From positions 310,001-374,000 of IMG/VR virus record IMGVR_UViG_3300024252_000004: a DNA stretch of 64,000 nt; one strand, 5' to 3'. Each line of letters begins with the position of its first letter. Within the stretch, counting starts at the first letter, position 1. The notes beneath the pieces are model-generated. The model searched no databases, had not been told where the DNA came from, and worked only from the letters and a program-made list of their open reading frames with translations. Below, piece after piece: positions 19,409 to 59,482 of this stretch. The position numbers were made by a program, and so were the translations under genes.

Positions 19409-20335
19409 TTACGCGATTGAAGCCCACCAAGCTTCGGCGTCAAAGTTCTCATCTTCATCGGCTAATGGCAATTCTTCCGAATCATCAGGCGTAGGCGCCT
19501 GCTGCTCAATAAGGGAAGCAATTGCCATTTGTGCTGTACCGGTAATGAATTCAAGGTTTGGCAGATAAAGAGTCTTCATGAACTTCTCGGCAGGAGCTTC
19601 AACAGCGAGCCATAGAAGCATAGAGATACCAAAGTCTATTGCGGAGACTGTCAAGCCTCCAATTCCAAGACCTGCGAAATATCCCAATACTGTCGGCATC
19701 AATAGGAGGATATCTTTAAACCCGTCAAGAAGATTGACGACAAAAGAAATTCCTTCGTCCCACAGTAAGCTGCCAGATTTTGTAAGTTCTACAACGGTTT
19801 TGAGTTCGACTGGAGACTCGGAATACTCTTTAGCTTTGCTCATCATTTTTGCAGGCTGTAGTGTGTCCATCCAGTTAAGGCCAACGTCACCAGATTTACC
19901 CTGTACTTTTTTGAATTCCTGAAAGCCATAATACACATTCTTAATGGCTATTAAGAAACTGAATAGTGGAGCAGCTTTGCCGAGCAGAGCCATAGCTCCT
20001 GCTTCTTTAACAAAGAAATCCTCTGATGTCATATTCATATTTGACATTACAACCCTAAGCTTCTCAGCAGAATCTTTAATATCTTCAGGGTCAGCTTCTT
20101 TTAGCGCCGCTGCATCTTTAAGGTTTTTTGCAGCTTCAACGAGGTATACTATAGCTTTAGTTTGCACCTGAGTTTCGTGAGGACGTTCGATCTCATTGAG
20201 AACTGCTTTCCACGCCTCAAGGTCTCCGCCAACGATATTTGCAGACTTGATTAGCAAGTGCGTAAGCTCGTCGGCTTCGCGGTTAAGGTTGGCTTCTTTT
20301 AGGATATCAATAAGGTATTTAAGTTCTTTGTCCAC
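19409..20335 (-). CDS. putative late/virion protein with hydrophobic helices and an N-terminal 'L..L...L.......AD' helix
   Basis: AGGAG RBS; TACTAATAAAA on the minus strand at 20358-20368. Confidence 0.8.
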   Translation of the reverse strand: MDKELKYLIDILKEANLNREADELTHLLIKSANIVGGDLEAWKAVLNEIERPHETQVQTKAIVYLVEAAKNLKDAAALKEADPEDIKDSAEKLRVVMSNMNMTSEDFFVKEAGAMALLGKAAPLFSFLIAIKNVYYGFQEFKKVQGKSGDVGLNWMDTLQPAKMMSKAKEYSESPVELKTVVELTKSGSLLWDEGISFVVNLLDGFKDILLLMPTVLGYFAGLGIGGLTVSAIDFGISMLLWLAVEAPAEKFMKTLYLPNLEFITGTAQMAIASLIEQQAPTPDDSEELPLADEDENFDAEAWWASIA

Positions 20336-20369
20336 TGACTGCTCCTAAGCATAAAGGTTTTATTAGTAA

Positions 20370-21494: not shown

Positions 21495-21813
21495 ACTAAG
21501 AAATTACATTTACTCTGTTGATGACGAAGAAACATTGGTCACTCTCAATGGAATGTTTCGTGACGCTTTGACTATCATTGATGTAGAGAGGAAGCTTCAG
21601 GAGCTAAAAGACAGCCTGTTCGACGGAGCCAGGATGGAGCACATGATGACATTAGCTCCATTTGAAGACGAAGAAGAGGTCATTCATATGGCGGTTACAG
21701 TCTTGAAGGGTAAGCTCAATGTGATTGAGGAAAGAAAGAAGGAAGAAGTAGCCGCCGAGCCTGAGGAACAAAAGCCCGAAGCTGTTCAGGAGGACTCAAA
21801 AACCGAGGATTGA
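21478..21813 (+). CDS. acidic hypothetical protein
   Basis: GAGG RBS. Confidence 0.7.
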   Translation: MNNPTELRNYIYSVDDEETLVTLNGMFRDALTIIDVERKLQELKDSLFDGARMEHMMTLAPFEDEEEVIHMAVTVLKGKLNVIEERKKEEVAAEPEEQKPEAVQEDSKTED

Positions 21814-21862
21814 TACTAATATCATGAAGCTCATGTGAATACCCAAATCTGGAGACTATCAC

Positions 21863-22813
21863 ATGGATAGAAAGATTAGAAAATCCCTTTTAGAGGACTT
21901 GATCAAAGCTGCTCAAGAGACTGATGATGATGAAGATGTAAGCTCTTTCATGGGCGATTTCCTCCCTTATGATGAGGGTCAGTTCGGAAACCATGAAGTC
22001 TTTATGGAAGACTTCACCACAAGGTTTAGGCCGAAAGATATCAATCAGGCAATCGCTATGTCTAATAATTCCAATTGGATCACGATTCCAGAGGTAGCAA
22101 GAAGAAAAGGTTTTCCTCACCTATATGTCCTTGACCCAGGAAAGGCAACTCCTTATGAAAGATACTTTGGAGTTAAGACTGAGTACGGGTATTTGGACAC
22201 ACCAGCTACAGCGGCGCTCAGAGCAGCAGTGTTCAACCCTGGTAAGGTGCATCGTTTTGAGGCTAACCAACCAATGCTTGAGATTCCACCAGATTACTCA
22301 TCTTTACCATCTGGAACAAAGTTTATGATATTGGATCCGCAGGCTGAGCAGTCTGTGATTGCGAATGCTTCAAGAATTATGGAAGGTGCGCAAGGGCGAC
22401 CAGAACATATCAGAAGGGTTAAGATTGACGAAACTGGCGCAGGAGAGTTTACCTCTACTCATGGCGGAGACAGACCTAAGTTAACGCCAGGAATGGCAGA
22501 GAATGATCCCGAACTTGATTCTAAGCTAAAGCATCTTGACACCGCAATCGATCGTTTCTATAAGGAAGATAAGGACGGTGGGATGCAACTTCGAAGGCTG
22601 CACTCTACAGTTGCAAGATTGAGACAAATCCTCGATTCGAAAATTGATGGTTTGGTGTCAGAACAAAGGGATAAGAATAGGGCTTTGAGATTCGAATTCA
22701 AGAAAGAAGAGTATGATGATCTAATTAAGCAAGCGCTTCTAAGAATCATTATCGCAGAGCTTACAGGCGAAGGTTCGCCATTCGAGGGGACAGACCTCGG
22801 ATTGCTTCAATGA
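21863..22813 (+). CDS. putative late protein
   Basis: TACTAAT at 21814-21820; GGAG RBS. Confidence 0.8.
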   Translation: MDRKIRKSLLEDLIKAAQETDDDEDVSSFMGDFLPYDEGQFGNHEVFMEDFTTRFRPKDINQAIAMSNNSNWITIPEVARRKGFPHLYVLDPGKATPYERYFGVKTEYGYLDTPATAALRAAVFNPGKVHRFEANQPMLEIPPDYSSLPSGTKFMILDPQAEQSVIANASRIMEGAQGRPEHIRRVKIDETGAGEFTSTHGGDRPKLTPGMAENDPELDSKLKHLDTAIDRFYKEDKDGGMQLRRLHSTVARLRQILDSKIDGLVSEQRDKNRALRFEFKKEEYDDLIKQALLRIIIAELTGEGSPFEGTDLGLLQ

Positions 22814-23154: not shown

Positions 23155-23164
23155 GGACAAATAA

Positions 23165-24512: not shown

Positions 24513-24578
24513 ATAGTTTTTAATCTACCCGAAACGTAAAAATGGTTGGAACCTTTTATGTTCTATGGAGATTAAAAC

Positions 24579-26180
24579 ATGGGAAAAGTTGTAAAGATTG
24601 GACCTGAAGCAAGAAAAGAAATGCTTCAAGGTGTAGATATTTTAGCAAACGCCGTTAAGGCCACTCTTGGTCCGCGAGGAAGAAACGTTGCTATCGAAAG
24701 GGAATGGGGTCACCCGCTTATTACAAAAGATGGTGTGACTGTAGCTCGACAGATCAGATTGGATGATAGAATTCAGAACATGGGAGCACAGTTGGTGCGT
24801 TCGGTTGCAGCCGCAGCAAATAGCGCGGCAGGAGACGGGACAACAACTGCAACTGTTCTCGCTCAGGCAATCTACTCCAAAGGCTTAGTTCTTGTAGACG
24901 AAGAGGGACTCAACCCTGTTCTTCTTAGACGCGGCATTGACCTTGCTGTGACAAAACTTTCAAGTAGACTGAAGGGCTTATCTGCATCTGTAAGCGATGA
25001 AGCAAGCATGAGAAGTGTTGCTGTAATCTCTGCAAATAATGATAAGGTTCTCGGTGCCAAAATCGCAGAAGCTATCGCGGCAGTTGGTCAGCACGGAGTC
25101 ATTTCCGTTGAGGAAGCGACTGGAAGATCAACTGAGGTGTTCTACTCGGAAGGTATCAAGCTCGATAAGGGATGGACCTCTGAGCATTTCGTGACAAATT
25201 CTGCAAGATTTACGGCAGAATTTGATGATTGTCTTATATTTCCTTATGATGGGGCGATTTCCAGCATCACTGATGTAAGGGAAATTTTTGAGGAATTAGC
25301 CGAGCAATCCAAACCCGTTCTTTTGGTTGTAAAGCAGATCACAGATGAAGCTATTGCTCATCTTGTCTACAACAAGATTCAGGGAAATATTAGAATCGCG
25401 GTAGTTCGTTCTCCTGGGTTTGGTGATTCGAGACGTGCATTCCTCGAAGACCTTGCCATTGTTTCTGGCGGAAAGATGTTCTGTGATAATGACGGAATCG
25501 GTCTTGACGGAGCAACAGTTGCTGATCTTGGGACCGCACGCAGGGTCATCGTAAGCCAGAACAGCACAACTATAATTGAAGGTGGGGCAGATCCCAAAGA
25601 TGTTGAGGCGAGAGCCATTCAGATTAAAGAGCAGCTTACTGCTGGTGGTCAACATGATTATCAGCTTGAGATTCTAAAAAGCAGACTTGCAAGAATCACT
25701 GGCTCGGCAGCGATTTTTAAGGTCGGCGGAAAATCTGAAGCTGAAATGAGAGAGAGAAAGGACAGAGTGGAAGATGCTATCAACGCTGTACGTTCAGCGC
25801 TTGAAGAAGGTGTAGTTCCCGGTGGTGGCTCCGCACTAATTCATGCCCTTCCAGTCCTTGACGAGATTGAGACAGATGGCCTTCTTCCTGAAGAGGTGGC
25901 CGGCATTGGAATTATCAGAGAGGCAGTTAAGGCCCCATTTTATCAGATTCTTGATAACGCCGGAGTCACTGGTGCTGATGATTTTGTTGAGCAGATTTTG
26001 AATTCTGATGAGCCAAGCGGTTATGATGCTCTTAATCTTGAGTTTGTAACTAACATGTTAGACAATGGGATTATGGATCCTTGTAAAGTTGTAAGAAGCT
26101 CTTTGGAGCATGCTGCATCAGCCAGTGGAACACTGCTGACGACAGAGGTTGCAATTTACGAAACTGAAACGGAGAGATAA
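24579..26180 (+). CDS. groEL: chaperonin GroEL
   Basis: TLGPRGRNV, ITKDGVTVA, GDGTTTATVLA, EGVVPGGG. Confidence 0.98.
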   Translation: MGKVVKIGPEARKEMLQGVDILANAVKATLGPRGRNVAIEREWGHPLITKDGVTVARQIRLDDRIQNMGAQLVRSVAAAANSAAGDGTTTATVLAQAIYSKGLVLVDEEGLNPVLLRRGIDLAVTKLSSRLKGLSASVSDEASMRSVAVISANNDKVLGAKIAEAIAAVGQHGVISVEEATGRSTEVFYSEGIKLDKGWTSEHFVTNSARFTAEFDDCLIFPYDGAISSITDVREIFEELAEQSKPVLLVVKQITDEAIAHLVYNKIQGNIRIAVVRSPGFGDSRRAFLEDLAIVSGGKMFCDNDGIGLDGATVADLGTARRVIVSQNSTTIIEGGADPKDVEARAIQIKEQLTAGGQHDYQLEILKSRLARITGSAAIFKVGGKSEAEMRERKDRVEDAINAVRSALEEGVVPGGGSALIHALPVLDEIETDGLLPEEVAGIGIIREAVKAPFYQILDNAGVTGADDFVEQILNSDEPSGYDALNLEFVTNMLDNGIMDPCKVVRSSLEHAASASGTLLTTEVAIYETETER

Positions 26181-26464
26181 TGGATGATTTTTTGCTGGTC
26201 AATGCAGGACTCAATCTTCAGAAGTTCGAGAACAATAAGCATTTCTCATTGGAAGAGCACCCTGAGATTATGGAAGCACTTAATGTATTTCCAAATGGGG
26301 AGATTTGCGGAATTCGACTTGAAGCAATCGAAGAGGTCTTAAACGACACAGAAGTTGACAACATTCGCAATGAACTCAAGGCAGCCCCAAAGCATGTAGA
26401 GATTAGATCAGCAAGAGATTTCTTAAAGGTCATAGCATACTACATTGATATTGAAGAATATTGA
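26180..26464 (+). CDS. hypothetical protein
   Basis: TAATG coupling to groEL; no GroES motif seen. Confidence 0.65.
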   Translation: MDDFLLVNAGLNLQKFENNKHFSLEEHPEIMEALNVFPNGEICGIRLEAIEEVLNDTEVDNIRNELKAAPKHVEIRSARDFLKVIAYYIDIEEY

Positions 26465-26515: not shown

Positions 26516-26553
26516 TCATTTCTAATAATATAGTTTGTTTGATTGAGGTGAAC

Positions 26554-28113
26554 GTGCGTAAGCTTGCAGACTTAGAAGTTACAGAGAAGACAGATCCTGC
26601 TACCGGAAATAAAATCCGTATTAGCACGACTGCTCGTCTTGCGTTGAGAATTATGTTTCCAAAGTTTACTGAAGAAAGGAATGCGAGACTAAATGATCGA
26701 ATGGCATTCATGTTCAGTAATTCAGCAGGCAACGTTGTTCACCGTTTCAAATTAGGGAACAAAGATACCGGAGCATGGCGCCCAGCGGAACCAGATTCTG
26801 GTGAACAGAATAATAGAGAAGTTGCTGAAATTAGGTCAGGCCCAGGCGGAGACTTTTTCTTCATTTCTGCTATTAGGCAGGGATACATTGATATCTTAAC
26901 ATTACAAGATAATTGGAAGCAGGGAAAGCCTAATCAAGGTGGATCAAAAGGTGCTGGCGCAGGAGCCGGTGATGGAGATGTATCTTTGGCGAGTCTGAAT
27001 ATCGACATGAGTATATTCGGAGCTACTAATAAAACGAATTTGGACAGAAACAGGAGACATAACATGTCAGCATTGCGCATTCTTGCAGATTTAGCAAACA
27101 AGTTGGACAGTTTTGGTGAGACCAAGGCTGCTGATGAAGTAACCAAGATGATAGAGAAGAGAGCTAGGTGGCCTTTTGGAAAGGCGGACGAAGAGGAAGA
27201 ATTTCCTGCTGCCCCTCCAGTCCCTAAGCCTCCTGTGTCTCCACAGTCTTCTCCATTTTTAAGAGGAACAATTCCTCCTGCGCCGCCTATGAACCCTGTT
27301 GTTACGACCAGTCCGGAAGGTTTCAGCGATGCTCCAGTTGCTGAACCAGCAGAGTCAAGAGTAGTTGGAAAGCTTGGTCCGATTAGGCCAGACAAAGATC
27401 CTTACTCTTACGAATTCCTTCCTTCCGAAGGTGTCTTCAGAGTTTCCAGCTACACTTATGGGCCAGGAGCGGCCCCTAACCCAAGGGCAGAGAGAGCCGT
27501 TGGCGCACATATTACAAGAGAAAATGCAAGAGCTTGGGCTGTATTGTCCGAGTATGTTCCAGAAGGGGACAAGTCCCCTTCCGAAGGGAGACATCTTCTC
27601 ACAGAGTCTACAGGTGATCCTGCAAGAGACTGGAAAGAAGCACAGCTTCAGTTTGCTGGCTGGGTTAACTCAGGACACTTTGGTACTGAACTTCAGAAGA
27701 AGTTTAGACTTGCAGACCCGGGTATGCCAATGCGTCAGCTTATGGATGCAGAGCTTTCTCCAGAGAGTGCGGGATTCCTTGTTGAAAGGTTTGAGGCAAT
27801 GATTGCTGGAAATGTTCTTTCGGATCTAAAAGATCCTGAGACTCTCCTCAGATATGCTCTTGAGCTTCAGAACTATGCTCATCTTGCTAACAGGGCAAGG
27901 GCAGTAGGTCAGCAGTCAATGAGAGAATCTGAGACGGTCATGTCTCCGGGTGGATACCCATCATCATACCCATCATCATCAGAGGCTGAAGATTTCACAC
28001 TGGCATCTATGGACTCAATAGAGGATATAAGAAAGAAGGCATCTGCTAACGTAGATAGGCTTGCAGCACTTTTCACAGTCCCAGGTGGAAGCGGTCCTTT
28101 CGGAAGGGACTGA
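26554..28113 (+). CDS. putative late/virion protein; nested in-frame start at 27064
   Basis: GAGGTG RBS then GTG (MRKLA); TTCTAATAATA at 26520; internal TACTAAT 27024 + AGGAG + ATG 27064. Confidence 0.8.
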   Translation: MRKLADLEVTEKTDPATGNKIRISTTARLALRIMFPKFTEERNARLNDRMAFMFSNSAGNVVHRFKLGNKDTGAWRPAEPDSGEQNNREVAEIRSGPGGDFFFISAIRQGYIDILTLQDNWKQGKPNQGGSKGAGAGAGDGDVSLASLNIDMSIFGATNKTNLDRNRRHNMSALRILADLANKLDSFGETKAADEVTKMIEKRARWPFGKADEEEEFPAAPPVPKPPVSPQSSPFLRGTIPPAPPMNPVVTTSPEGFSDAPVAEPAESRVVGKLGPIRPDKDPYSYEFLPSEGVFRVSSYTYGPGAAPNPRAERAVGAHITRENARAWAVLSEYVPEGDKSPSEGRHLLTESTGDPARDWKEAQLQFAGWVNSGHFGTELQKKFRLADPGMPMRQLMDAELSPESAGFLVERFEAMIAGNVLSDLKDPETLLRYALELQNYAHLANRARAVGQQSMRESETVMSPGGYPSSYPSSSEAEDFTLASMDSIEDIRKKASANVDRLAALFTVPGGSGPFGRD

Positions 28114-29690
28114 TGGAGAAAAAGACGCCGGGGTTTTCATTAGATGATTTAGTTCCATCTGAAGAAGCTGCGTCAGGCATGCACGTTCCTGTAGGGGAGA
28201 TGATGTTTGCAATCCCGAATAAAGCAGATGATGAAGAGATTGAGGAGGAAGGTATGGAAAAGGAAGCCTTAGGCTTGACCAGTATGCCTCAATCTTTATA
28301 TGGCGGCGAAGTTCTTGACCTGCCAGGAAGTCCTCAGCCTTCTGGACTCAGCAGAGAACAGGGCGAGGATGAAGAGACTGAATTTTTTGGAGCTAAAGAG
28401 GAGGGCGTAGATCTTCCTCCAGAACATTACAAAACTCAGAAGAAACAGGGAATCTCAGAAGATGATGAAACAGATGAAGAATTCTTTGACTTCTTATTTA
28501 CTAACAAAAGTCACAACTTCCTGAGAGAGGAATCAAACATGAGACACTTAATTGAGAAATTAGCCGAAGGGTTAGATAAGGTTGGAGAAAAGGACGCAGC
28601 ACTTGTTGCATTGGCACTTACCGACGATAGAATAAACTATTCGGAGTCTGTAAAACCTCCTGCACCTGATAATTCTGCCCCTGATTCGAGAAAAGATGAA
28701 ATCTATAAAAAATTAGTATATGATTTTGGGATGATTACAGATTGGCTTTATCGCCCAGACGGTGAATTTACACCCAACAAATTAGAGAAAATGTGGGAAA
28801 TGCTCAAGCAGCGCAAGCCTGCGCTGAGTGATGACAGAAAAGCGGAATTTATGAGTCTTGCAAAAGAGTGGGGGATGCAAGATCGTTATGGGGAAAGTTC
28901 TGCGGAAGAAGTTTCGACCGGCGAAGGAGTGCTTGCAAAGCCAGCAGAGCAGCCGTCTGGCGGAGTAACTCCGGTAGCTAAGCCAAGATCCGGCTGGGAA
29001 GGTTACTTCGCAAATGGTGGACCAAAAGGCATGAAAGCCGCCTGGGAAGCATGGGTGGCAGCCAACCCTAATCAGGGATATGATGCGTCTTTCTTGTCAT
29101 GGGTTAAGTGGTACAGGAAGCAGGTTACAGATAGAACCATTCCGTCTGGAGGTAATGTAGATGCTGTTCTTAGACTATTAGGAGGGGCTGCTCCCGCAGC
29201 GCCAGCCGCAAAAACAGATGAGGCAGCTAAGCCTGCTGAGGATACTGAGCCACCTATTGCAGAAGAGGGTAAGCCTCCAAGAGAGGCAATGGAAGAATAC
29301 TTCAGAGCTATTTCTTCTAAGACAAGAGAAGCGAGAATCGCAGGTCCGTTAAGACTAAGAAACGCAAGAGTCAGAAGAAGAATCAGAAGACTCGGAGATC
29401 CAGCAGCGGCAGTAGAAGCTGTTCTCTCTTTCAGAGGCGGAGGCGATGTTGAGAAGGGTCTTGCGCTTTATGATAGTTATGATCAGACACAGACACCTGA
29501 AGGAACAGAAGAGCGCGGTGGCAAAACCGTATCAACCTACAAGATGTCTGAGTTCCAAAACAAGGCAGTCAGTGATATCCTTACTCTGAAAGTAAGGGAT
29601 TATAGAGCTGGCAGAGGACGTACCAGAAGAAGCGTGGCTTTTGAGGACAGACAAGATCAGCTTCTAAAGATGGCAGCAGAAAATTCCTAA
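28113..29690 (+). CDS. putative late/virion protein; nested in-frame start at 28539
   Basis: TGATG coupling; acidic N-terminus; internal TACTAAC 28499 + GAGGA + ATG 28539. Confidence 0.8.
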   Translation: MEKKTPGFSLDDLVPSEEAASGMHVPVGEMMFAIPNKADDEEIEEEGMEKEALGLTSMPQSLYGGEVLDLPGSPQPSGLSREQGEDEETEFFGAKEEGVDLPPEHYKTQKKQGISEDDETDEEFFDFLFTNKSHNFLREESNMRHLIEKLAEGLDKVGEKDAALVALALTDDRINYSESVKPPAPDNSAPDSRKDEIYKKLVYDFGMITDWLYRPDGEFTPNKLEKMWEMLKQRKPALSDDRKAEFMSLAKEWGMQDRYGESSAEEVSTGEGVLAKPAEQPSGGVTPVAKPRSGWEGYFANGGPKGMKAAWEAWVAANPNQGYDASFLSWVKWYRKQVTDRTIPSGGNVDAVLRLLGGAAPAAPAAKTDEAAKPAEDTEPPIAEEGKPPREAMEEYFRAISSKTREARIAGPLRLRNARVRRRIRRLGDPAAAVEAVLSFRGGGDVEKGLALYDSYDQTQTPEGTEERGGKTVSTYKMSEFQNKAVSDILTLKVRDYRAGRGRTRRSVAFEDRQDQLLKMAAENS

Positions 29691-29856: not shown

Positions 29857-30867
29857 ATGTTGTTATCCGCAGATGTTGTAGTGGGGCTCGCTTGGGGCGA
29901 TGAAGCAAAAGGAAAGATCACCTCAGCCTTGGCAGCTACAGGGCAGTACGACGCCGTGGCTCGCTGGGCCGGAGGCAATAACGCAGGCCATACGGTCTAC
30001 GTCAATGGCGAAAAATACAAAACACACCTTGTTCCAAGCGGCGTATTCCACGGAATGCTTTCCATCGTTGGTCCCGGCTGTGTATTGCATCCAGAAGAAT
30101 TTGAAAAAGAATTGGCTTACCTCGCAGGACACGGATTCGATACCTCTCTTGTGAAGGTATCTCCGAATTGCCACATTGTTCAAGACGAGCATATTGAGTT
30201 TGACAAGCAGAACCTTGCAAAGAAGCTTGGCACAACCTCAAAAGGTATTGCACCGAGTTACGCAGCTAAGGCGGCAAGAACAGGTCTTCTTGCCAAAGAC
30301 TATTACGAAGGCAGTGACATCCTATGGGACGGTCAGCTTAGCGGTGTATTATTGTGTGAAGGAGCGCAGGGGGCTTGGTTAGATATTGATCACGGGAATT
30401 ATCCCTATGTGACCTCAAGCATTACACTTGCCTATGGAGCTTGCAGTATAGGCTTCGCACCACAGCTCATTAAGAGCATCTGGGGCGCTGCCAAAATTTA
30501 TGACACAAGAAGCGGAGAAGATCCTATTTTTCCTGCGTCACTACTTGATGACCCTATGCTGTCAAAGGTTGGGGAAATTGGGGCCGAATATGGTGTGACC
30601 ACAGGGCGCAGAAGAAAGGTAAATTGGCTTGATGTTGATATGCTGATTAAGTCTATCAATTTGACTGGATGCACACACGTTGTTGTTAGCAAATGTGATG
30701 TATTGGAAGAGGCCGGAGTTTACAGGATGTATTGTAGAGGGATTCAGAACGAGCTTTCTGAGTTCGAAAGCATTACCGATATGACCGGAGTGCTGGAGAC
30801 TCTTCTTAGAAAGAATTGTTCCCTTCTCAAGAGAGTGATCTTTTCCTCTTCACCGGAGAATATATGA
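29857..30867 (+). CDS. purA: adenylosuccinate synthetase (short form)
   Basis: GLAWGDEAKGK, GGNNAGHT, EGAQG, YPYVTSS, GVTTGRRR; GGAGG RBS. Confidence 0.95.
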   Translation: MLLSADVVVGLAWGDEAKGKITSALAATGQYDAVARWAGGNNAGHTVYVNGEKYKTHLVPSGVFHGMLSIVGPGCVLHPEEFEKELAYLAGHGFDTSLVKVSPNCHIVQDEHIEFDKQNLAKKLGTTSKGIAPSYAAKAARTGLLAKDYYEGSDILWDGQLSGVLLCEGAQGAWLDIDHGNYPYVTSSITLAYGACSIGFAPQLIKSIWGAAKIYDTRSGEDPIFPASLLDDPMLSKVGEIGAEYGVTTGRRRKVNWLDVDMLIKSINLTGCTHVVVSKCDVLEEAGVYRMYCRGIQNELSEFESITDMTGVLETLLRKNCSLLKRVIFSSSPENI

Positions 30868-51193: not shown

Positions 51194-51961
51194 ATGGACG
51201 AGTTAACAGAAGAATTGAACGAAGAGCTGAATAAGATTGAGAACGAAATAGAGGTTGCTAAAGAAGGGAAGAAAGCTTCTTTCGAGGGCATAGTTAGAGT
51301 ATATGACGAGACGTTCTATGTGAACACCGAAACCGGTGTTGGTTTGGATAGCGTGCTAAAGAAGATTGAGCCGCTCTTGAATAAGATGTCTTCCAAGACA
51401 TATATTGCTGGATATACCTTTGAGGATATCAAACAAGAATTAACCATTATGGCGATCCAGGGGGTCTGTTCTTACAACCCTGCACGAGGAACAAAGCTTA
51501 GTTCATTCCTTCAGACTCATCTTAAGAATAAGCTTATCTCTAAGTTAAGAAGCGTTAATAAAATGTCCAATGATTCTTTTGCGCTATATGAGAAGAAGGG
51601 TTCTAATGTTGGTGGCGGTAAGATCAGAAAGGTAAGGGAAGAGATTCTGTTTAGTGCCTGTACCCCAGATAGTGTTGTAGACCCATCTATGATGTTCGAG
51701 AATACTGTCGCAGAGGAAGAGGGACTGTACGGAAAGACTGGACCATCGTTTGCTGATAAGGATTTTCAGCTTGCGCTTGAAAGTCTTGAGGGTGAAATTG
51801 ATGAAGACACTATCACTATCATGAAGCTCATCTATTACGAAGATTACCCAATTAAAAAGGCAGCAGCAGTTGTAGGATTGACGGGATGGGCCGCAAGTAT
51901 GCGACTCAAGAAGCTTACTGAGAACGAGTGCTTCATGGATGCCTTCGGAGATATGGTATAA
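51194..51961 (+). CDS. phage RNA polymerase sigma factor (sigma70 regions 2 and 4)
   Basis: FEDIKQEL..YNPARGTKLSSFL..LKNKL; C-terminal HTH YYEDYPIKKAAAVVGLT..RLKKL. Confidence 0.8.
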   Translation: MDELTEELNEELNKIENEIEVAKEGKKASFEGIVRVYDETFYVNTETGVGLDSVLKKIEPLLNKMSSKTYIAGYTFEDIKQELTIMAIQGVCSYNPARGTKLSSFLQTHLKNKLISKLRSVNKMSNDSFALYEKKGSNVGGGKIRKVREEILFSACTPDSVVDPSMMFENTVAEEEGLYGKTGPSFADKDFQLALESLEGEIDEDTITIMKLIYYEDYPIKKAAAVVGLTGWAASMRLKKLTENECFMDAFGDMV

Positions 51962-51967
51962 AAGTGA

Positions 51968-53362
51968 ATGGCCGTAGTAACAGACAACGACATCTTGAGG
52001 TACATAGATACTGAAAAAGATCTTTCCAGGTTCAATATAAAGACCCTAGAAAGGCTTAAGGATATCTCAGCCTCCAAGAGACGAATTCTCGAAATAGAAA
52101 GAGAGTTCGTTTCTCTTCCATTGGATCAATGGGAGTTTGAGGATGTCGCGGATGTTGCTGCGGCCATTTCTATTTATAGGTCTTCTCGTAGCCTTTTCTA
52201 TAAAACCTATGGAGTGAAGAAGCCAAAAAGCCTTACCAAGAAAGAATTGGCAGAAAGGTTGAATATTAAAATTGACTTCATTCAAGATGCTGCCAACGAG
52301 TTCACAGGTAGAAAGGTTGAAGAGATTAATCTTGTTCAGGATGAGGAGCTTTTTTATGAACTCGGCAAGCACATGGCGCGACGGGGGAGAAAAAGGTTAC
52401 AAACCGTTGTGAAGGAACTTGAGCCGCTTTCATTAGATGAGCTTAATAAGCTGGAACCAATAATGATCTCTAAAGATAGAGCAAGAAGACAAGCGACCCT
52501 ATACTCCCTTGGTCTATACTTCAGAGAAGAACTGTCCAAAATTAAAATTGAAGCTTCGTTAACGAAGGAAAGTCTTATGTCGTGGATTGATAGATTGGAT
52601 TCTATAATGGATAATGTTCCTGCCAACCTTTTCAAAAACTATAACGTTTCTCTTGAAATGCTTCCGTCAGAATTTGATTCCGGAATGGGTCAGAATAGTT
52701 ATTTTCGAAAGACTCATCGTCTAAGGAACATTTTAGATTTTGATAATATGGTAAGAGACCTGTCGGATGCTCCTTCCTTATTTAACAATGGCGATTTCGA
52801 CTTCGCAGAGCCTATGGTGGGCAGGCTCACTCCGGACGAGAAGAAGGTTATAGGTGCGGGCTTTTCAAAAGAGAAAAGAAGGAAATCAAAAACTAAAACC
52901 TTCGGAGTTATGCTGCCTATTCCGAGATTAGGAAATGAGAAAATGAGCCTCATGCACGCACACATACGCGCGTGTGGACAAAATATAACCCCTCTTTTTG
53001 ATGAATGTATTTCAAACATCAGGGTTTCGTATGAAGATGAGCAAGTCTATTTTAAAGCTTTAATGATGAAACCTTTATGGACAGTCTTGGATTCTTCTTC
53101 TAATAACGTAAGATATGGTATGGTACTGTCCAGACTTATCGGTTATGAGTTTCGGCATGTTGAAGAGTTTGATAAGGTAAAGGTCATCGATTTGGTTAAT
53201 GAATGCAGAAGCGATTTTATGTCTCTTGACTTAGGCAGTGTAGCTTTTGTTCCAAAGACCAGATCCGAAGAAGATGCTTTTCATAAAATCAAACCATGGA
53301 TCAATGAGATAGCCTCCCAGCTCAGGGATGACTATTACACTACTACTAATGATAGTTGTTAG
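51968..53362 (+). CDS. hypothetical protein
   Basis: 464-aa ORF. Confidence 0.8.
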   Translation: MAVVTDNDILRYIDTEKDLSRFNIKTLERLKDISASKRRILEIEREFVSLPLDQWEFEDVADVAAAISIYRSSRSLFYKTYGVKKPKSLTKKELAERLNIKIDFIQDAANEFTGRKVEEINLVQDEELFYELGKHMARRGRKRLQTVVKELEPLSLDELNKLEPIMISKDRARRQATLYSLGLYFREELSKIKIEASLTKESLMSWIDRLDSIMDNVPANLFKNYNVSLEMLPSEFDSGMGQNSYFRKTHRLRNILDFDNMVRDLSDAPSLFNNGDFDFAEPMVGRLTPDEKKVIGAGFSKEKRRKSKTKTFGVMLPIPRLGNEKMSLMHAHIRACGQNITPLFDECISNIRVSYEDEQVYFKALMMKPLWTVLDSSSNNVRYGMVLSRLIGYEFRHVEEFDKVKVIDLVNECRSDFMSLDLGSVAFVPKTRSEEDAFHKIKPWINEIASQLRDDYYTTTNDSC

Positions 53363-53398
53363 ATTGAATATTTTTATTCTGACATAAGGCGAATTAAT

Positions 53399-56300
53399 AT
53401 GCACAAAATTGCTAATGAAGTTACTTTTGCAAATCAGCAAATGGTTGAAAGAATCTTTTCTCGCATGAGAGACGGAGAGTACGCAGATACGGTAGCTACT
53501 CTTTCAGCCATTCATGACCTAATGTCGCAGCAAGCAGACCTTAGCGTCATTGATGCGACCAAGGAAGTTATTGGAGACAATAACTTCGTTCAGGGATTTG
53601 CACGATACATTACACATTATATTGGAGAAGGACAGTTCAGGGGAGTACCTTTTGAAAGTCTGTCAGAATCTCTATATGCATTCAGAGCACCTGCGGCTAT
53701 CCCTGAAGGGGAACAGGTTCCGGAGGCGGCGACTACAGAGCCGGCAGAAGAAGAAGGCTTAAGCAAGCCTGACTTTGCAGAAGACCTTGAGAGAATCAAG
53801 ACGCAAAAATACCCTGAAGCTGAGAGGGAAAGGGTTATGATGTCCTTTAAGAACCTCGGCCTTCATTTAAAGAAGCTTCACGAAGCTACAGAAGAAGGTG
53901 ATGTTGAGCTTTATGCTGAGCAAATCAGGGGAACTATTGAGTTCTTAGATTCTTTAGTTAAGTATGCCCCTCTTGACAAGAAGGATGAATCGGATCCGGA
54001 TAGCAAGAAGAAAGGGCCTAGCAAAAAAAGGGGATCAAAAGTTGTTAAAGCTGGAGAGACGAATCTTTCAGAAGAAGATGTCGCAAACAGAATGGACACA
54101 AGGGTTCGTGTACAAGAGATTCCTGCAACGTTGAGCATGGAGACTTTGGGGTCTCATGCAATTGTAAGGGGAATCGAAATTGTTTCCGAGACAGGTTTGA
54201 CCACGGAAACCATCCGCCAGACAGAGGAGTCTCTTGTTCAGGTTATGAACAATGCAAAGAAAGCTTTTGTTCATTTTGAACAACTTACTTCTGGAATGAT
54301 TGAACGGCATCGACAGACCAGAACAAAAGGTAAGGGCTCAGACAAAGCTGATTCAAAGGTTAGTAATAGCGTACTTATCGATTTTAACAATTTGATTTAC
54401 GCAATCAAGGGTGTTGATCTTTTTGTTAAGAAAGCAATTAGGGCAGCAATTATGGATCCAGAGAATTCAATTTCTGGAGTGGAACTTGCTGGACTTAGAG
54501 ATAAATTGCTTGTGCCACAATTTGTTGCGGATAAGGCGTTCTTCAGTGAGACAATTGTGCTTGGATTATCGTACCTTGCAGTTAGAGATGTAGGTCTGCT
54601 ATACGCCGGTATAAAAACATGGGGAGACTTCGAAGGCGACACATACTCTTCAGTTGTTGAGGACTATGGAAAGGATCTTCATGGCGGACGAAGCTTAGAA
54701 GATGATACTACTGAATACATTTTTAAACTTATGTGGTCAAAGTTCAGAAGGATGCTCTCTGCGACATCAACAGATCAGGCAGTAAACGATTCAGATCCGA
54801 TGAAGAACTTCATTAGTAATGTTTTATTCCAGAAAGGCTTTGTTGCGCAAAACCTTAGAAGAGATCTTCGTTCATCTGAAAGCAGCAAGGTTAACATTGC
54901 TAAATGCCCCACATGTACTCGTCCAATTAAATGGTCCGGCAAACCCCTTAAGGATTTGGATCTAATCCAGTCTAGAGGCGCATACCTTCCTATGTATTCT
55001 TTTGTAGGAAAGCGCTTAAAAGATGATGGCCGAAAAACATCATTTATCATAACTGAGAGACACTTAGAGGAGGGAGGTCCTTATCCTGCTCCGGATTCTT
55101 CAAAAATTGGAAACGCTTCTCAGATGAATGAGACTAAAGCTGATGGCTCTTTGACGAACAAAGCTAAGCTCCTAAAGAGGACTCGTTCTGTCATTGATAG
55201 CTACGAAGGTTCCAAAACATGGTCAGAAATCCTTGAGTTACTTTATTCCAATGAGCCTGCCGAGCATGAAGAAGGACTTCAGAGAAGAGCCGGAGCATTA
55301 GCTCATCTTGGCGCGGTACGGTTACGGCACAAAAGAAAGGGAGGCGCAGGCGTCCCAGTCATGACGGACATTAGTACGATCATGTATGCTTGCCCATTCC
55401 AGAAGGAAGAGGCAGAAACGGGATTTTCGAAAAGCGACATATTCAGTCCAAAAGATGAGATTACAAAAATTAAAACAGAGCTTCAGTATCCTGACGATCC
55501 AGAGACTCAAGCCGCTGTTGGTGCAATTTTTGACAAAATTGATGAACTTAATCTGTCATTTGCAGAAGCTGTGATGAACGATCCGGATATCGAGGCTCTC
55601 ATTCGTGGAGAACTCGAAGAAGCATTCGATCAGGCTTATGATCTTGCAGGCGTAGTTAGGGGCGAAGATGAAGCAGAAGAAGAGGGAGAGGTTGGTCCTG
55701 CATTTTCTCCATCTGGCTGTGGCTTGAAGTTGTCGCCTTACGAAGATGATCCGTCAAAGATGACTTATGGTTCCAATTCTAATCCAAATGTGTTACAGTA
55801 TACATGGAACCCTCGTGAATTTGATGAAACACAAGAAGCTGCGGCACAGAAGAGCCTGTCTGGAGGATACAAGTTCTCTAAGACGATCTTTAGGTGTCCG
55901 GCAAGAATCGTTGATCCATCATCCACAGATCTTATAAAATATAAAAACGTTGCAATTCCGAAGTCTGGACCGTCTGGCATTGGGAGTGGAGCCTATGTTC
56001 CGCCTACAAACGCATCAGGATATGCGGCTTATGATGAGATCGAAAATGGGACTTTCTCTTACCTTGTATGTGGCGCCTCAACTTCCCTCTCCGCTTTTGA
56101 TAAAACTTCTGGAGGAGAAGGCTCTATCTATACCATTTTAAGAAACCTTCTTAATGTAATTAAGGGTTCCAGCGCAACAGGGGAGAGTGTTACTAACTCC
56201 CAGAAGAATGCAGCAAAAAACATAATCGACTTCCTTATTCTTGAAGGAATTGACTACATGGACCTCATCAAAGCATTAGAGGTTGCAGACGCTCCAGAGC

Positions 56301-59300
56301 CAGAACTTGCTACAACCGCCCGTTTGAAGAAATGCAGAATAAAAAAGATAGAAAAAATGCTCGTTACAGCAGCAAGACAGCTTCCGTCTCAGTTCTCTGA
56401 GATTGAAGAGCTTGTTCTTGTGTGTCCTCACGGTCATAGGTTTTCACTTAAGCAGTCTGTAGGGTTCAGCGAGACCCACGTTTCTGTAAGAATGTCGGGC
56501 GCCAATAAAGGATATGCTGCGGCCAAAGAACTTTATGCTTTGACCGGAATTGAAAGCCTTGAGGCTGCAAAAAGGATTGGAGTTATTGTTAGAGCTGTTG
56601 ACGAAGAAGAGTTGAAGACTTTTGAGGATATTGGTAGCGAGAATCACAGTGTTGAAGAGTTAGCATTTGTAATCCCTGATGAGTTGGGGAACCCAGTCAG
56701 ATGGAAGTTTTCACCCCGTATTACTGATCTTATCAAGAAGAATGCATTCTCTGAGTACCCTGGTGCTGGACAGGAAGATATTCCTTCATCAATCGAGTAT
56801 TCAAAAGTGAAATTTGGTGGGCAATTTTTGGCGGACCTTATCAAGGAGGGGGCTGGTTCAGGGAGTGAGGAAGAAATCGCTGCTGGAAAACAAGCTGCTG
56901 CGGATTATCGCAGAGATGAAGATGCCGGAAGCGAAACTCTTTCCAGAGCAATCGAGGGCATTGACTCTAAGGACCTCGCGAGCAACATTGAGGCTTTGGC
57001 AAGATCCCTTAGGGGCGCTCTTAAGATTGTAATCACTTGGAATAATAGAGCTATTGAGCCTGAGTTTTTCAACAAAGTTGTTGCAAACTCGGATTTCTCA
57101 ATCGAAGGAGTACCCGAAGAAATTCTTAGTATCGATGGATTATTCTACACTGAAGATGACGGTTTGGACTCAGCAGCACTGAGCGCCGTATTAACAGCTT
57201 TCGCCCCAAGGCTCAAGACCTATATCGTAGCGACAAATGCTTTCCAAGGAGAGGACTACGTTGGTTCAGCAACAGCTTTAGCTACAGCGGCATTGGTTGA
57301 TGCTGTAGTTCAAGTTGCAAATGATACGGAACACGATATCGAATTCGATCTCGATCTCGACTCTGACAATACAGAATTTGAGTTTGTCTATGCAAAACTT
57401 GCTTCATTCTTTGAAGATTATAGAGCAGATTTTCAGAAGCTAATTCCTTACATCACTCATAGTGATGAAAGATATGTGGCTAAAGCGCAAGAGATTGCCT
57501 CTAAGACACCAGTTCTTTCAATTTTTTACACGATTGCATCTTACCGCACCGAGAAAAAAGGTCAGGAGAGAACAAGACTTCGTGAAGCATACGGAAAGAA
57601 AATATTCTTGGTCGCATACGCAAGATATCTTGCAAATGCAATCGCAGTTGTTTATAATGAATGCATGGCGCCAGGAAGATGTATTCCAGGGGCATACATC
57701 GGATATAACATTGGAGTAGATCTGTCTACAACTGACAAAGTATTAGCTTTGACTAGTGGTGATCTCAGAATAATTGAAGATAACCCGAATCTTCGGGGTG
57801 CAAATCACGGGATTGTTCTCAGAAATGTTGTAGCAGCATATAATGGTATTATCGCAAGAATGTCTATTGCAAGAAATATGGCAATTTCTCCAATTGGTTT
57901 GGCCGAAGCTAAGAAAGAACTTCTTAGGCAGTCCGGAACATCTGGTGACCCGTTGGCTCATGCAGTTTTCTCTTCTGCTTTCCCAATGCAAACTGTTGAT
58001 TTCGGAATGGAGAACCTTACTTATGGTTCAGGGAATATTCCAAATGCATTCGGCATTAGGGCTGGCAAAGGAAGAGCTTTACCTTCTGAGCTTCATGAGT
58101 CAGAAGAAGAAGGTGTTGAACCGGCAGTATTGCCGCCAGCAATGCTACCGGTAACAAGGAGGGACGGCTCCCCTGTTCTTGACAGAGCGGGGCAGCAGAA
58201 AGTCATTCCAGCATATCTTCATCCAGATTCAGGTTTCGATAGTTCGAAATTCCAGATTGGCATGTGTATGGGTAAGACAGGCAAATCCCTTACTTGGCCT
58301 CTCGATCATGCAAGTGATTTCGTAGGGTTCCCGCTTCCATTCAACAGAGATAAAACTGCCACAGTAACAAGAGCGGCAGATGCTGCCGTTTATGATTTCA
58401 GATTCGTAATCGATATCGAAGGGGTACCTCAAGATATTTCTTTCCTCTTTAGAAGAGGAAGAATGACAAAGGAGGAAGATGGGGAAAGAAAAAATAAGTA
58501 TCTCCCAATTTTGCGAGAACTTTATTCTAAACTTGATACTTTTGAAGATCAAAGAGGTGATGCACTTGAGGATGCTAAGAATAGCGAAGAAGAGGATGCA
58601 ATCAATAATCATTTTGATGACGCTATTAGAGAAACTCAGTCTGCTCTAAAGCAGATTCCTCTATTCATAAAAGCAGGAAAGTCTTATGTGAGAAATAAAG
58701 CTTCCCTCGGTTCTTCTGAGCCAAAATGGATTTCCGAAGCTCATCCGACAGCACTTCTTGTAGCTCCGAATGAGGCTCTCAACCTTATCAAAAATGTTGA
58801 GAGATTCGCTGGCATGCTTTCTGTTGCTCCAAACCAAGAACTATTAGAAAGGTTTGTAATTCAGGTGTATGGACTTGGGGTTGTTAGGGATATTGTTCAA
58901 GAAGCACAGAACAAGTACACAGACGAAATTGCCGAAATTAGGGCTGAAGATATTTTCGACACTCACATCGATGGAAACACTTCCTCTGGGAAAAAGATGC
59001 TTTCGCATATCAATAGTAGCCTTTCAAAGGTTTACTCTGAGCATCTTGGGCAGTACTATGATCTCATTCCTTCTGGCGCAGACGGAACCGGTTCTAACTT
59101 GGTATTGCTCGAAGCGTCTGTACCTTCGTTTAAGGAGAATAGAAGATCCGAATCCGGATTTGAAGTCGTCCCTGATGAAGGATTAGGAACACCACCTTCT
59201 ATTGGCAAACTGGCATCAAGAATGAATAAGAATAATTCAATCTCAGATTTCTTTGGACGTGGCGCTGAAGGTGATGTTGGCATGACTTATTTGCAGAAGG

Positions 59301-59482
59301 CTCAAGAGTCTATGATCGAATACGTTAAGGGGCATGCATCCGGGGAGCTTGGCTCCCACACAACGGAGGCGTCATTGAAGACCGAATATTTGAAGAAGAT
59401 CGCTAAGAGGCGCAAGTCTTGGGAGCGTATGATGTTAACGATGGGTGAGGCCGACATAGAGGTCGATGACCTCGTCGGCTGA
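53399..59482 (+). CDS. giant (2027 aa) putative late protein with dispersed Cys knuckles
   Basis: Uninterrupted ORF; TACTAAT at 53344; CPTC, CPF, GCG, CPA, VCG, CPHGH. Confidence 0.85.
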   Translation: MHKIANEVTFANQQMVERIFSRMRDGEYADTVATLSAIHDLMSQQADLSVIDATKEVIGDNNFVQGFARYITHYIGEGQFRGVPFESLSESLYAFRAPAAIPEGEQVPEAATTEPAEEEGLSKPDFAEDLERIKTQKYPEAERERVMMSFKNLGLHLKKLHEATEEGDVELYAEQIRGTIEFLDSLVKYAPLDKKDESDPDSKKKGPSKKRGSKVVKAGETNLSEEDVANRMDTRVRVQEIPATLSMETLGSHAIVRGIEIVSETGLTTETIRQTEESLVQVMNNAKKAFVHFEQLTSGMIERHRQTRTKGKGSDKADSKVSNSVLIDFNNLIYAIKGVDLFVKKAIRAAIMDPENSISGVELAGLRDKLLVPQFVADKAFFSETIVLGLSYLAVRDVGLLYAGIKTWGDFEGDTYSSVVEDYGKDLHGGRSLEDDTTEYIFKLMWSKFRRMLSATSTDQAVNDSDPMKNFISNVLFQKGFVAQNLRRDLRSSESSKVNIAKCPTCTRPIKWSGKPLKDLDLIQSRGAYLPMYSFVGKRLKDDGRKTSFIITERHLEEGGPYPAPDSSKIGNASQMNETKADGSLTNKAKLLKRTRSVIDSYEGSKTWSEILELLYSNEPAEHEEGLQRRAGALAHLGAVRLRHKRKGGAGVPVMTDISTIMYACPFQKEEAETGFSKSDIFSPKDEITKIKTELQYPDDPETQAAVGAIFDKIDELNLSFAEAVMNDPDIEALIRGELEEAFDQAYDLAGVVRGEDEAEEEGEVGPAFSPSGCGLKLSPYEDDPSKMTYGSNSNPNVLQYTWNPREFDETQEAAAQKSLSGGYKFSKTIFRCPARIVDPSSTDLIKYKNVAIPKSGPSGIGSGAYVPPTNASGYAAYDEIENGTFSYLVCGASTSLSAFDKTSGGEGSIYTILRNLLNVIKGSSATGESVTNSQKNAAKNIIDFLILEGIDYMDLIKALEVADAPEPELATTARLKKCRIKKIEKMLVTAARQLPSQFSEIEELVLVCPHGHRFSLKQSVGFSETHVSVRMSGANKGYAAAKELYALTGIESLEAAKRIGVIVRAVDEEELKTFEDIGSENHSVEELAFVIPDELGNPVRWKFSPRITDLIKKNAFSEYPGAGQEDIPSSIEYSKVKFGGQFLADLIKEGAGSGSEEEIAAGKQAAADYRRDEDAGSETLSRAIEGIDSKDLASNIEALARSLRGALKIVITWNNRAIEPEFFNKVVANSDFSIEGVPEEILSIDGLFYTEDDGLDSAALSAVLTAFAPRLKTYIVATNAFQGEDYVGSATALATAALVDAVVQVANDTEHDIEFDLDLDSDNTEFEFVYAKLASFFEDYRADFQKLIPYITHSDERYVAKAQEIASKTPVLSIFYTIASYRTEKKGQERTRLREAYGKKIFLVAYARYLANAIAVVYNECMAPGRCIPGAYIGYNIGVDLSTTDKVLALTSGDLRIIEDNPNLRGANHGIVLRNVVAAYNGIIARMSIARNMAISPIGLAEAKKELLRQSGTSGDPLAHAVFSSAFPMQTVDFGMENLTYGSGNIPNAFGIRAGKGRALPSELHESEEEGVEPAVLPPAMLPVTRRDGSPVLDRAGQQKVIPAYLHPDSGFDSSKFQIGMCMGKTGKSLTWPLDHASDFVGFPLPFNRDKTATVTRAADAAVYDFRFVIDIEGVPQDISFLFRRGRMTKEEDGERKNKYLPILRELYSKLDTFEDQRGDALEDAKNSEEEDAINNHFDDAIRETQSALKQIPLFIKAGKSYVRNKASLGSSEPKWISEAHPTALLVAPNEALNLIKNVERFAGMLSVAPNQELLERFVIQVYGLGVVRDIVQEAQNKYTDEIAEIRAEDIFDTHIDGNTSSGKKMLSHINSSLSKVYSEHLGQYYDLIPSGADGTGSNLVLLEASVPSFKENRRSESGFEVVPDEGLGTPPSIGKLASRMNKNNSISDFFGRGAEGDVGMTYLQKAQESMIEYVKGHASGELGSHTTEASLKTEYLKKIAKRRKSWERMMLTMGEADIEVDDLVG

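What the first reader, a model, noticed from the sequence alone, without database searches (positions are those of the whole stretch)
19409..59482. Shared 'L..LA..LD..G....AD' N-terminal helix and terminal K-x-A motifs across unrelated late proteins: candidate capsid-targeting and maturation code
Seen: LKYLIDILKEANLNREADELTHLLIKSA (start 20335, minus strand), LADLANKLDSFGETKAADEVTKMIEKRA (27064) and IEKLAEGLDKVGEKDAA (28539) align, while the protein bodies are unrelated. K-x-A recurs at the ends of TACTAAT-preceded proteins: MRKLA (26554), MHKIA (53399), LIKAA (21863). It also recurs in the C-terminal forms TLASMDSIEDIRKKA, SVAFEDRQDQLLKMA and TEASLKTEYLKKIA. Established: T4 internal proteins use an N-terminal capsid-targeting sequence, and T4/phiKZ prohead proteases cut after Glu. 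Inference: a different system with a helical targeting propeptide removed at K-x-A, loading a family of injected proteins.
Basis: partly seen in the sequence, partly recalled or inferred. Interest (0 to 1): 0.75.

Follow-up and report, generated by a model that had tools for sequence, protein, structure and literature searches.

The report
Shared hairpin tag on late proteins
An uncultured 395-414 kb jumbo phage puts the same 32-residue helix-turn-helix tag at the start of at least ten unrelated proteins that share one promoter type with its head and tail genes; the tag also occurs in other uncultured large phages and is in no family library, so it looks like an undescribed protein-sorting or docking signal, but nothing shows that it is cut off at K-x-A.

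Summary
A gapless 32-residue helix-turn-helix occurs in 10 proteins of this phage at 32-53 bits; shuffled and reversed proteomes reach at most 7 bits. A profile search of 1.8 billion proteins found 32 proteins, almost all from uncultured phages, usually with a copy at residue 1-10 and sometimes repeated. Pfam and PHROGs do not hold it.

The two internal copies, in genes 26554-28113 and 28113-29690, each begin at a conserved Met. The first has a nucleotide-conserved TACTAATA and AGGAG ahead of it; the second has weaker versions. They are probably nested genes whose products start with the tag.

Seven of the ten tagged genes carry the TACTAATA-class element (Fisher 2e-8). That element also precedes the major-capsid operon and a large gene at the head of the tail module. 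Tagged bodies include a LysM-lysozyme, a kinase-like protein, an ADP-ribosyltransferase-like protein and a hydrophobic protein.

The K-x-A code fails. K-x-A runs at background frequency, is not enriched at C-termini, and is conserved only as the end of the tag's second helix. No prohead protease was found.

Best reading: a portable docking tag for late proteins, perhaps for virion loading. No partner is identified.

The parts
19409..20335 (-). Gene A, 308 aa. The hairpin tag is at residues 1-32, followed by a helical, partly hydrophobic body.
   Evidence: ORF and translation. Profile score 45.9 bits. Orthologues in L020 and L021 at 76% and 60% identity. Hydrophobic windows fall between residues 112 and 245.
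20240..20335 (-). Hairpin tag of A, residues 1-32, ending in K-S-A.
   Evidence: AF2 secondary structure is H3-14, turn, H18-33, from a low-confidence model.
20361..20368 (-). TACTAATA promoter-like element, 33 nt before A's start codon.
26554..28113 (+). Gene C, 519 aa. It has a conserved N-terminal domain, then an internal tag, a Pro-rich linker and a conserved C-terminal domain.
   Evidence: Five-member family alignment A1.
26520..26527 (+). TTCTAATA, a one-mismatch variant of the promoter-like element, 34 nt before C's start.
27024..27031 (+). Internal TACTAATA inside gene C, 40 nt before ATG 27064. It is read in frame as the invariant peptide A-T-N-K.
   Evidence: Identical at nucleotide level in L020 and L021 while the flanks diverge. 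12 of 13 plus-strand TACTAATA in the genome lie 25-62 nt before a start codon.
27052..27056 (+). AGGAG ribosome-binding site, with 7 nt between it and ATG 27064.
   Evidence: Conserved in all three orthologues. Only 10 of 1907 internal in-frame ATGs have AGGAG at this distance.
27064..28113 (+). Proposed nested gene C' (349 aa), in frame with C. Its product would begin with the hairpin tag, encoded at 27064-27165.
   Evidence: Tag score 52.9 bits. Inferred from sequence only; no protein data.
28113..29690 (+). Gene D, 525 aa. It has a conserved acidic N-terminal 142 aa, then an internal tag and a variable middle region.
28499..28506 (+). TACTAACA, one mismatch from the element, 40 nt before ATG 28539.
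   Evidence: The L021 orthologue has exact TACTAATA 49 nt upstream. In L020 the site is degenerate.
28539..29690 (+). Proposed nested gene D' (383 aa). Its product would begin with the hairpin tag, encoded at 28539-28634. This case is weaker than C'.
   Evidence: Met conserved in three orthologues, with GAGGA-like sites in two. Tag score 38.2 bits.
21863..22813 (+). Gene B, 316 aa, with TACTAATA at 21814-21821. It is not a member of the tag family.
   Evidence: No profile hit. Its N-terminus is conserved in orthologues.
53399..59482 (+). 2027-aa protein with TACTAAT at 53344-53350.
   Evidence: Best profile hit 1.7 bits. No Pfam, PHROG or GenBank-phage match.

Best explanation
The feature is a conserved, portable module of about 32 residues made of two antiparallel helices.

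This jumbo phage places the module at the N-terminus of at least ten otherwise unrelated proteins. Two of those appear to be made from in-frame nested genes that have their own promoter element and ribosome-binding site.

Shown: the motif, its significance, its conservation, its bias towards N-termini, its link to the TACTAATA-class element, and its presence in other uncultured large phages.

Inferred: the conserved acidic and polar positions N10, D13, D22 and D25 form a face that docks on one common partner made late in infection. The tag would then sort a set of accessory, effector-like proteins to one place. I think that place is most likely the assembling virion (head interior or tail lumen), so that the proteins are delivered with the DNA, as the T4 capsid-targeting sequence or a P22 scaffold helix-turn-helix fusion does. 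Removal of the tag by a protease is not part of this explanation.

That the module is real I put at about 0.9. The confidence given for this explanation is for the whole statement, including virion sorting.
For: Motif statistics are. Protein-level selection is shown. Orthologue conservation is shown.

The search of 1.84 billion proteins gave 32 hits at E <= 0.001, and 53 instances align without a gap. Of 23 families outside this phage and outside the C family, 20 have a copy starting within residues 1-10. Contigs L022, L023 and L035 each carry two tagged genes.

AF2 models a two-copy protein as helix-turn-helix twice, with pLDDT 82.

The [AT][AT]CTA[AT]TA element lies 25-62 nt upstream of 7 of 10 tagged genes against 17 of 497 others, p = 2e-8. 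The same element precedes the operon that ends in the major capsid protein (phrog_2522, E = 5.6e-72) and the 1069-aa gene at the head of the tail module.

Tagged bodies:
- LysM plus Phage_lysozyme, E = 1e-34, with the tag ending exactly where LysM begins.
- A protein-kinase-like domain.
- An ADP-ribosyltransferase-like domain, which is a lead only.
- Hydrophobic protein A.
- An acidic 139-aa protein.

Ordinary lysozymes of about 140 aa lack the tag, so it is an add-on. In a 348-kb phage a tagged protein is encoded directly after the tail-tube gene.
Against: - No partner has been identified.
- No protein of the head module between terminase and tail genes carries the tag.
- Tagged genes are scattered through the genome rather than sitting in the structural module.
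- There are no virion proteomics and no cultured relative.
- A kinase and the phage's only Phage_lysozyme-family enzyme could equally act inside the infected cell.
- The tag resembles a generic idealised helical hairpin: PPR repeats score 5-6 bits per unit and a de novo designed protein gives E = 0.1.
- Late timing is inferred from which genes follow the promoter element. It has not been measured, and no RNA run holds this DNA.
Confidence: 0.4

Rival explanations
1. The helix is a capsid-targeting propeptide that a prohead protease removes after K-x-A. K-x-A near other N- and C-termini marks further maturation cuts.
For: The conserved part of the tag ends at K30-x-A/S32 and variable, often acidic, sequence follows. 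The tagged set resembles T4 packaged cargo. Some relatives of gene C carry an HEMGH insert just upstream of the tag.
Against: K.A is at background frequency and is not enriched at C-termini. PF03420 is absent, and no protease family is recognisable in the head module. The capsid protein has no long propeptide. Tag copies occur internally, in tandem and at the very C-terminus, where cleavage would release nothing. The HEMGH insert is missing from this phage and has no PDB relative. K30 and A32 fit a helix-packing pattern without needing any cleavage.
Confidence: 0.08
2. The hairpin is an association or localisation tag for late functions inside the cell rather than in the virion. It might bundle tagged proteins with each other, or hold lysis and host-takeover proteins (lysozyme, membrane proteins, kinase) at one site or on one regulator until needed.
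For: The tagged set includes the only Phage_lysozyme-family enzyme in the genome and hydrophobic proteins. The second wall hydrolase, an amidase, follows a small gene with a sub-threshold hairpin look-alike that has the same promoter element upstream. Some proteins carry 2-3 copies, and a two-copy protein is modelled with pTM 0.64. Three of ten tagged genes are on the minus strand against 24 of 497 others, so they are separately transcribed units.
Against: A fold of two different tags together gave no verdict, so it supports nothing. The kinase-like, transferase-like and acidic proteins have no evident tie to lysis. In another phage a tagged gene lies inside the tail module.
Confidence: 0.25
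3. The hairpin is only a stabilising N-terminal cap or a recurrent low-information helical hairpin with no shared partner. Its spread reflects easy convergent origin or domain shuffling without a common function.
For: It resembles consensus PPR units and a de novo designed hairpin. Paralogous tags in this genome share only about 18% identical residues and 36% identical bases. Searches with the folded model found no structural relative.
Against: The 53 instances align without a gap, and surface-type positions N10, D13, D22 and D25 are among the most conserved. The tag shows a strong N-terminal bias and a strong link to one promoter class. Three phages conserve a promoter element, ribosome-binding site and Met that put the tag at the start of a nested product.
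Confidence: 0.15

Closest known systems
T4 capsid-targeting sequence of internal proteins IPI-III and Alt, removed by the gp21 prohead protease (from established knowledge; reviewed in PMC9026906 and PMC5694885, which one search listed but I did not read)
   Same: A short tag shared by unrelated late proteins sits at the N-terminus. The cargo set includes an ADP-ribosyltransferase-like protein.
   Different: The T4 tag has about 10 residues and ends in L/I-x-E. This one is a 32-residue acidic hairpin ending in K-x-A. There is no sequence likeness, no gp21-family protease and no gp23-type capsid protein. The tag also occurs internally and in repeats. Packaging and cleavage are untested.
C-terminal helix-turn-helix of the P22 scaffolding protein, which binds coat protein and is used to load foreign cargo into P22 capsids (from established knowledge)
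   Same: It is a helix-turn-helix of about 30 residues with a Gly at the turn, and it acts as a portable docking unit.
   Different: The P22 unit is C-terminal and basic, and it sits on the scaffold itself. The present tag is N-terminal and acidic, and it sits on enzymes. No homology is detectable.
Lambda C/Nu3, Mu I/Z and P2 gpO: in-frame nested genes in which a protease shares its C-terminal part with a scaffold protein (from established knowledge)
   Same: Genes C and D have an in-frame internal start with its own ribosome-binding site, and here its own promoter element too. In some relatives the long form of C carries an HExxH insert just upstream.
   Different: C and D lie beside a chaperonin gene, about 57 kb from the terminase gene, and not in the head module. 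This phage's copy of C has no protease motif. There is no protein evidence.
Propeptides of head and ejection proteins in phiKZ, 201phi2-1 and SPN3US, cut at S/A/G-x-E (PMC7411985 and PMC10052503, listed and not read in full)
   Same: These are jumbo phages that load many accessory proteins into the head.
   Different: The cleavage motif is different. No homologous proteins or protease were found here.
Single TPR or PPR helical-hairpin unit
   Same: The sequence pattern is alike: helix, Gly turn, E-A, helix.
   Different: Those repeats work as tandem arrays. Here single units stand alone at N-termini. Matches are only 5-6 bits per unit, and Pfam reports no TPR or PPR hit.

Membership tests
T4-type capsid-targeting sequence system | A gp21-family prohead protease (Pfam PF03420) is encoded by the phage. 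| tested here: not met
   PF03420 has no match in the 395-kb record, though the control genomes did not ring either. No protease family is on record or found for the head-module genes recovered from fuller assemblies.
T4-type capsid-targeting sequence system | A tag of about 10 residues ends in the L/I-x-E cleavage site. | tested here: not met
   The tag has 32 residues. Position 32 is A or S in 32 of 53 instances and E in 2.
T4-type capsid-targeting sequence system | Tagged proteins are found processed inside the capsid. | not testable with these tools
   The phage is uncultured and no proteomics exist.
P22-type scaffold coat-binding helix-turn-helix | An independent helix-turn-helix of about 30 residues. 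| tested here: met
   AF2 models a two-copy protein as H2-14, turn, H18-45 and H53-77, turn, H81-92, with pLDDT 82.
P22-type scaffold coat-binding helix-turn-helix | A C-terminal position on the scaffolding protein and a basic binding face. | tested here: not met
   The tag is mostly N-terminal, and its conserved charged positions are acidic: D13, E20, D22 and D25.
TPR/PPR repeat proteins | Tandem arrays of adjacent units that reach the family thresholds. | tested here: not met
   Copies are single or widely spaced. There are no Pfam TPR or PPR hits. Matches to designed PPR proteins are 5-6 bits per unit.
Nested protease/scaffold genes (lambda C/Nu3 type) | An in-frame internal start codon with its own ribosome-binding site. 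| tested here: met
   In gene C, the ATG, AGGAG at -12 and TACTAATA at -40 are conserved in three phages. The case for gene D is weaker.
Nested protease/scaffold genes (lambda C/Nu3 type) | The long form carries a protease domain, and the gene lies in the head module. | tested here: not met
   The HEMGH insert occurs only in relatives P0003-P0005 and not in this phage, and it has no PDB relative. The genes lie next to the chaperonin gene, far from portal and capsid genes.
Any curated protein family (Pfam-A, PHROGs) | The tag region matches a family model. | tested here: not met
   No hit covers the tag in the phage's own proteins or in canonical database examples. The only matches are sub-threshold: PF05396 at 23.2 bits against a cut-off of 27.1, and unknown-function PHROGs at E = 0.003-0.08. 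The T7 scaffold protein itself scores -1.2 bits against the motif profile.

The most novel reading that the evidence does not exclude
The hairpin is the address label of a cargo-loading system, not yet described, that is shared by a broad clade of uncultured jumbo phages. One acidic helix-turn-helix, read by a single virion receptor, would load a changeable set of enzymes into the particle for injection: lysozyme, kinase, ADP-ribosyltransferase-like protein and membrane proteins. Nested genes with internal late promoters would make tagged and untagged-extension forms of the same protein.
Probability: 0.3. Interest if true: 0.8.

Novelty: new variant of a known kind. Interest (0 to 1): 0.6.

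Why it matters
Jumbo phages carry many proteins of unknown role, and how accessory proteins are chosen for packaging or for a common site is known only for T4 and phiKZ-like phages.

A short, recognisable tag would mark a whole regulon of late accessory proteins. It would let such proteins be picked out of metagenomic phage genomes by sequence alone. It would point to a receptor that can be searched for. It could also serve as a portable handle for loading foreign proteins.

Two results stand whatever the tag does. TACTAATA is the dominant start-proximal element in this genome. Genes C and D probably hold nested genes, which improves the annotation of this phage group.

Tried and rejected
- Relatives among GenBank phages: none at DNA or protein level for the window, gene C, the 2027-aa protein or canonical tag proteins.
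- Literature search for the motif as a string gave only irrelevant hits.
- T7 scaffold lead: one tag protein hit PF05396 below its cut-off, but T7 gp9 itself scores -1.2 bits against the motif profile. Rejected.
- PDB sequence searches gave only designed PPR or de novo hairpins for the motif, and nothing for the P0021 family or the HEMGH insert.
- Foldseek of the two-copy model against viral structures gave no match better than E = 0.97.
- ESM Atlas gave leads only, and none for the tag alone.
- AF2 of protein A reached pLDDT 40 and is unusable beyond secondary structure.
- Complex prediction with the tag of A against the tag of the lysozyme gave no verdict (score 0.01). It counts neither for nor against binding.
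- No RNA run holds this DNA, so transcript starts could not be read and read laying was not used.
- The database protein that begins at Met143 of D is not evidence for a separate gene, because its contigs are simply broken 27 nt upstream.
- Hairpin look-alikes below significance were not counted: the products of genome 87956-89530 and 190895-191299, and two proteins beside the capsid gene in L032.
- Arg codons AGG and AGA are the commonest in this genome, so the AGGAG inside 'RR' is not remarkable on its own.
Full report
**Setting.** The window is bases 310001-374000 of a 395,127-bp IMG/VR phage record. Almost all genes are on the plus strand: my own gene calls give 480 plus and 27 minus. Nothing similar exists among GenBank phages.

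Most of the window encodes metabolic and replication functions, not structural proteins:
- a chaperonin at 24579-26180
- an adenylosuccinate-synthetase-like protein
- a DHH phosphoesterase
- a MoxR-type ATPase and a DUF2201-family (PF13203/PF09967) protein; in the related contig L020 the next gene bears Peptidase_M16 domains
- FtsK-like and SbcCD-like proteins
- a sigma-factor-like protein

**The helix.**
- A fourth copy turned up at the N-terminus of a 139-aa acidic protein elsewhere in the genome.
- A profile built from these copies and their orthologues finds ten proteins at 32-53 bits. The four weaker N-terminal members had first appeared as look-alikes in a search with a profile that did not contain them.
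- One protein outside the training set scores 14 bits. Reversed and shuffled proteomes stay at or below 7 bits.
- Eight of the ten copies begin at residues 1-7.
- Orthologues in two related contigs keep the motif. In gene A synonymous differences outnumber non-synonymous ones, so selection acts on the protein.

**Beyond this phage.** The profile was run against 1.84 billion representative proteins and gave 32 hits at E <= 0.001.
- One hit is a TPR-like repeat protein. The rest come from metagenomic contigs, several of 200-400 kb.
- Their 53 motif instances align over 32 residues without a gap.
- L5, L8, A9, L12, D13, G16, A21 and D25 are nearly invariant. N10, E20 and D22 are strongly preferred.
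- Of 23 families unrelated to this phage's proteins, 20 have a copy starting within the first ten residues. Many have second or third copies, some at the extreme C-terminus.
- Three other contigs each carry two tagged genes.
- Pfam and PHROGs do not cover the motif.
- AF2 models a natural two-copy protein as two helix-turn-helix units with pLDDT 82.
- The only sequence likeness is to consensus PPR units and a designed hairpin. That describes the shape, not the ancestry.

**K-x-A.** K-x-A occurs at background frequency across the proteome.
- It is not enriched at the C-termini of TACTAAT genes.
- A weak N-terminal enrichment plausibly comes from the K-E-A at the tag's own turn.
- M-x-K-x-A opens four proteins in 507.
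- The proteins at 21863 and 53399 do not match the profile.
- K-x-A is conserved only at positions 30-32 of the tag, with K in 28 and A or S in 32 of 53 instances.

**Internal copies are probably N-terminal after all.** In genes C and D the tag starts at a Met conserved in every orthologue.
- In C this ATG (27064) has AGGAG ending 7 nt upstream and an exact TACTAATA 40 nt upstream.
- Both elements are identical at nucleotide level in three phages whose flanking sequence has diverged. The TACTAATA is read in frame as the invariant peptide A-T-N-K.
- Genome-wide, 12 of 13 plus-strand TACTAATA sites lie 25-62 nt before a start codon.
- Only 10 of 1907 internal in-frame ATGs have AGGAG at that distance.
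- D has TACTAACA at -40 and a GAGGA-like site. One orthologue has exact TACTAATA and the other is degenerate.
- I infer nested genes C' (349 aa) and D' (383 aa). The conserved upstream parts show that the long forms are made as well.

**Promoter link.** TACTAAT is the most enriched upstream 7-mer, 16 observed against 1.4 expected.
- The relaxed element [AT][AT]CTA[AT]TA lies 25-62 nt upstream of 24 genes. Seven of these are among the ten tagged genes (p = 2e-8). C' and, with one mismatch, D' add two more tagged products.
- The record lacks about 19 kb that fuller 414-kb assemblies hold between the terminase and tail genes.
- That stretch contains the terminase (GpA_ATPase domain), the portal (phrog_16240) and a 339-aa major capsid protein (phrog_2522).
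- TACTAAT precedes the operon that ends in the capsid gene. It also precedes the 1069-aa gene at the head of the tail module.
- Late timing is therefore a reasonable inference, but it has not been measured.

**What is tagged.**
- A LysM-lysozyme, in which the tag ends where LysM starts. Three full-length relatives keep the tag, while ordinary lysozymes of about 140 aa lack it.
- A protein-kinase-like protein.
- A protein with ADP-ribosyltransferase-like features, which is a lead only.
- Hydrophobic protein A.
- An acidic protein and several proteins of unknown kind.

Three of the ten tagged genes are on the minus strand, against 24 of 497 others.

**Mechanism.** A single hairpin with conserved surface acidic residues, placed at the start of many unrelated late proteins, is best read as a docking tag for one partner.
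- Virion loading fits the timing and the cargo types. It also fits a tagged gene that lies next to the tail-tube gene in another jumbo phage.
- Against it, no partner is known, and the head module holds no tagged protein.
- No prohead protease is recognisable, and the capsid protein has no long propeptide.
- Cleavage is therefore not supported. Association or localisation inside the cell remains a serious rival.

Noticed in passing
window 26554-28113; relatives P0003, P0004 and P0005: Three homologues of gene C carry an extra segment of about 140 residues with an HEMGH motif (zinc-peptidase-like), placed just before the conserved A-T-N-K/TACTAATA site and the tag. This phage and its closest relative lack the segment.
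   Followed up: partly
window 24579-26464; genome 379379-381049: The phage encodes a GroEL-type chaperonin followed by a 94-aa gene, directly upstream of genes C and D. A protein at genome 379379 has an N-terminus that looks like a second chaperonin.
   Followed up: no
window 29857-31700; genome 181513-182802: Two adenylosuccinate-synthetase-like genes match the PHROG used for PurZ. One sits next to a DHH phosphoesterase gene. This may point to a modified purine in the DNA.
   Followed up: no
ends of the 395-kb record; loci L029 and L032: The record is called 100% complete but lacks about 19 kb that 414-kb assemblies hold between its two ends. The missing stretch has most of the terminase gene, the portal gene, a DUF192-domain protein, a GIY-YIG gene and the major capsid operon.
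   Followed up: yes
window 28512 (27 nt before ATG 28539); loci L037 and L038: Two independent assemblies break at exactly the same base, just upstream of the D' start. This may mark a strain-variable junction in front of the tag.
   Followed up: no
genome 190189-191299, minus strand (L040): A small, very basic protein with a hairpin look-alike near its C-terminus and the promoter element upstream is followed by an Amidase_2 gene that also carries a peptidoglycan-binding-like C-terminus. This is the phage's second wall hydrolase.
   Followed up: partly
genome 94900-96342: A 480-aa protein gives a weak match to the phage tubulin PhuZ (E = 1.4e-4).
   Followed up: no
genome about 141000-158000: This stretch is gene-poor in my calls. 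tRNA T-loop words (GGTTCGA, GGTTCAA) are enriched upstream of the short ORFs there, so it is probably a large tRNA gene block.
   Followed up: no
window 51194-51961: A protein similar to sigma-70 region 2 is encoded about 1.4 kb upstream of the TACTAAT-preceded 2027-aa gene. It is a candidate for the factor that reads the TACTAATA element.
   Followed up: no
genome 386521-387453; proteins P0007, P0017, P0020-P0022, P0024, P0031: Seven tag-bearing database proteins share a conserved Cys/His-rich C-terminal domain. This phage has a homologue at the syntenic place between the primase and terminase genes. Its Cys residues are degenerate and its N-terminus is only faintly tag-like.
   Followed up: partly
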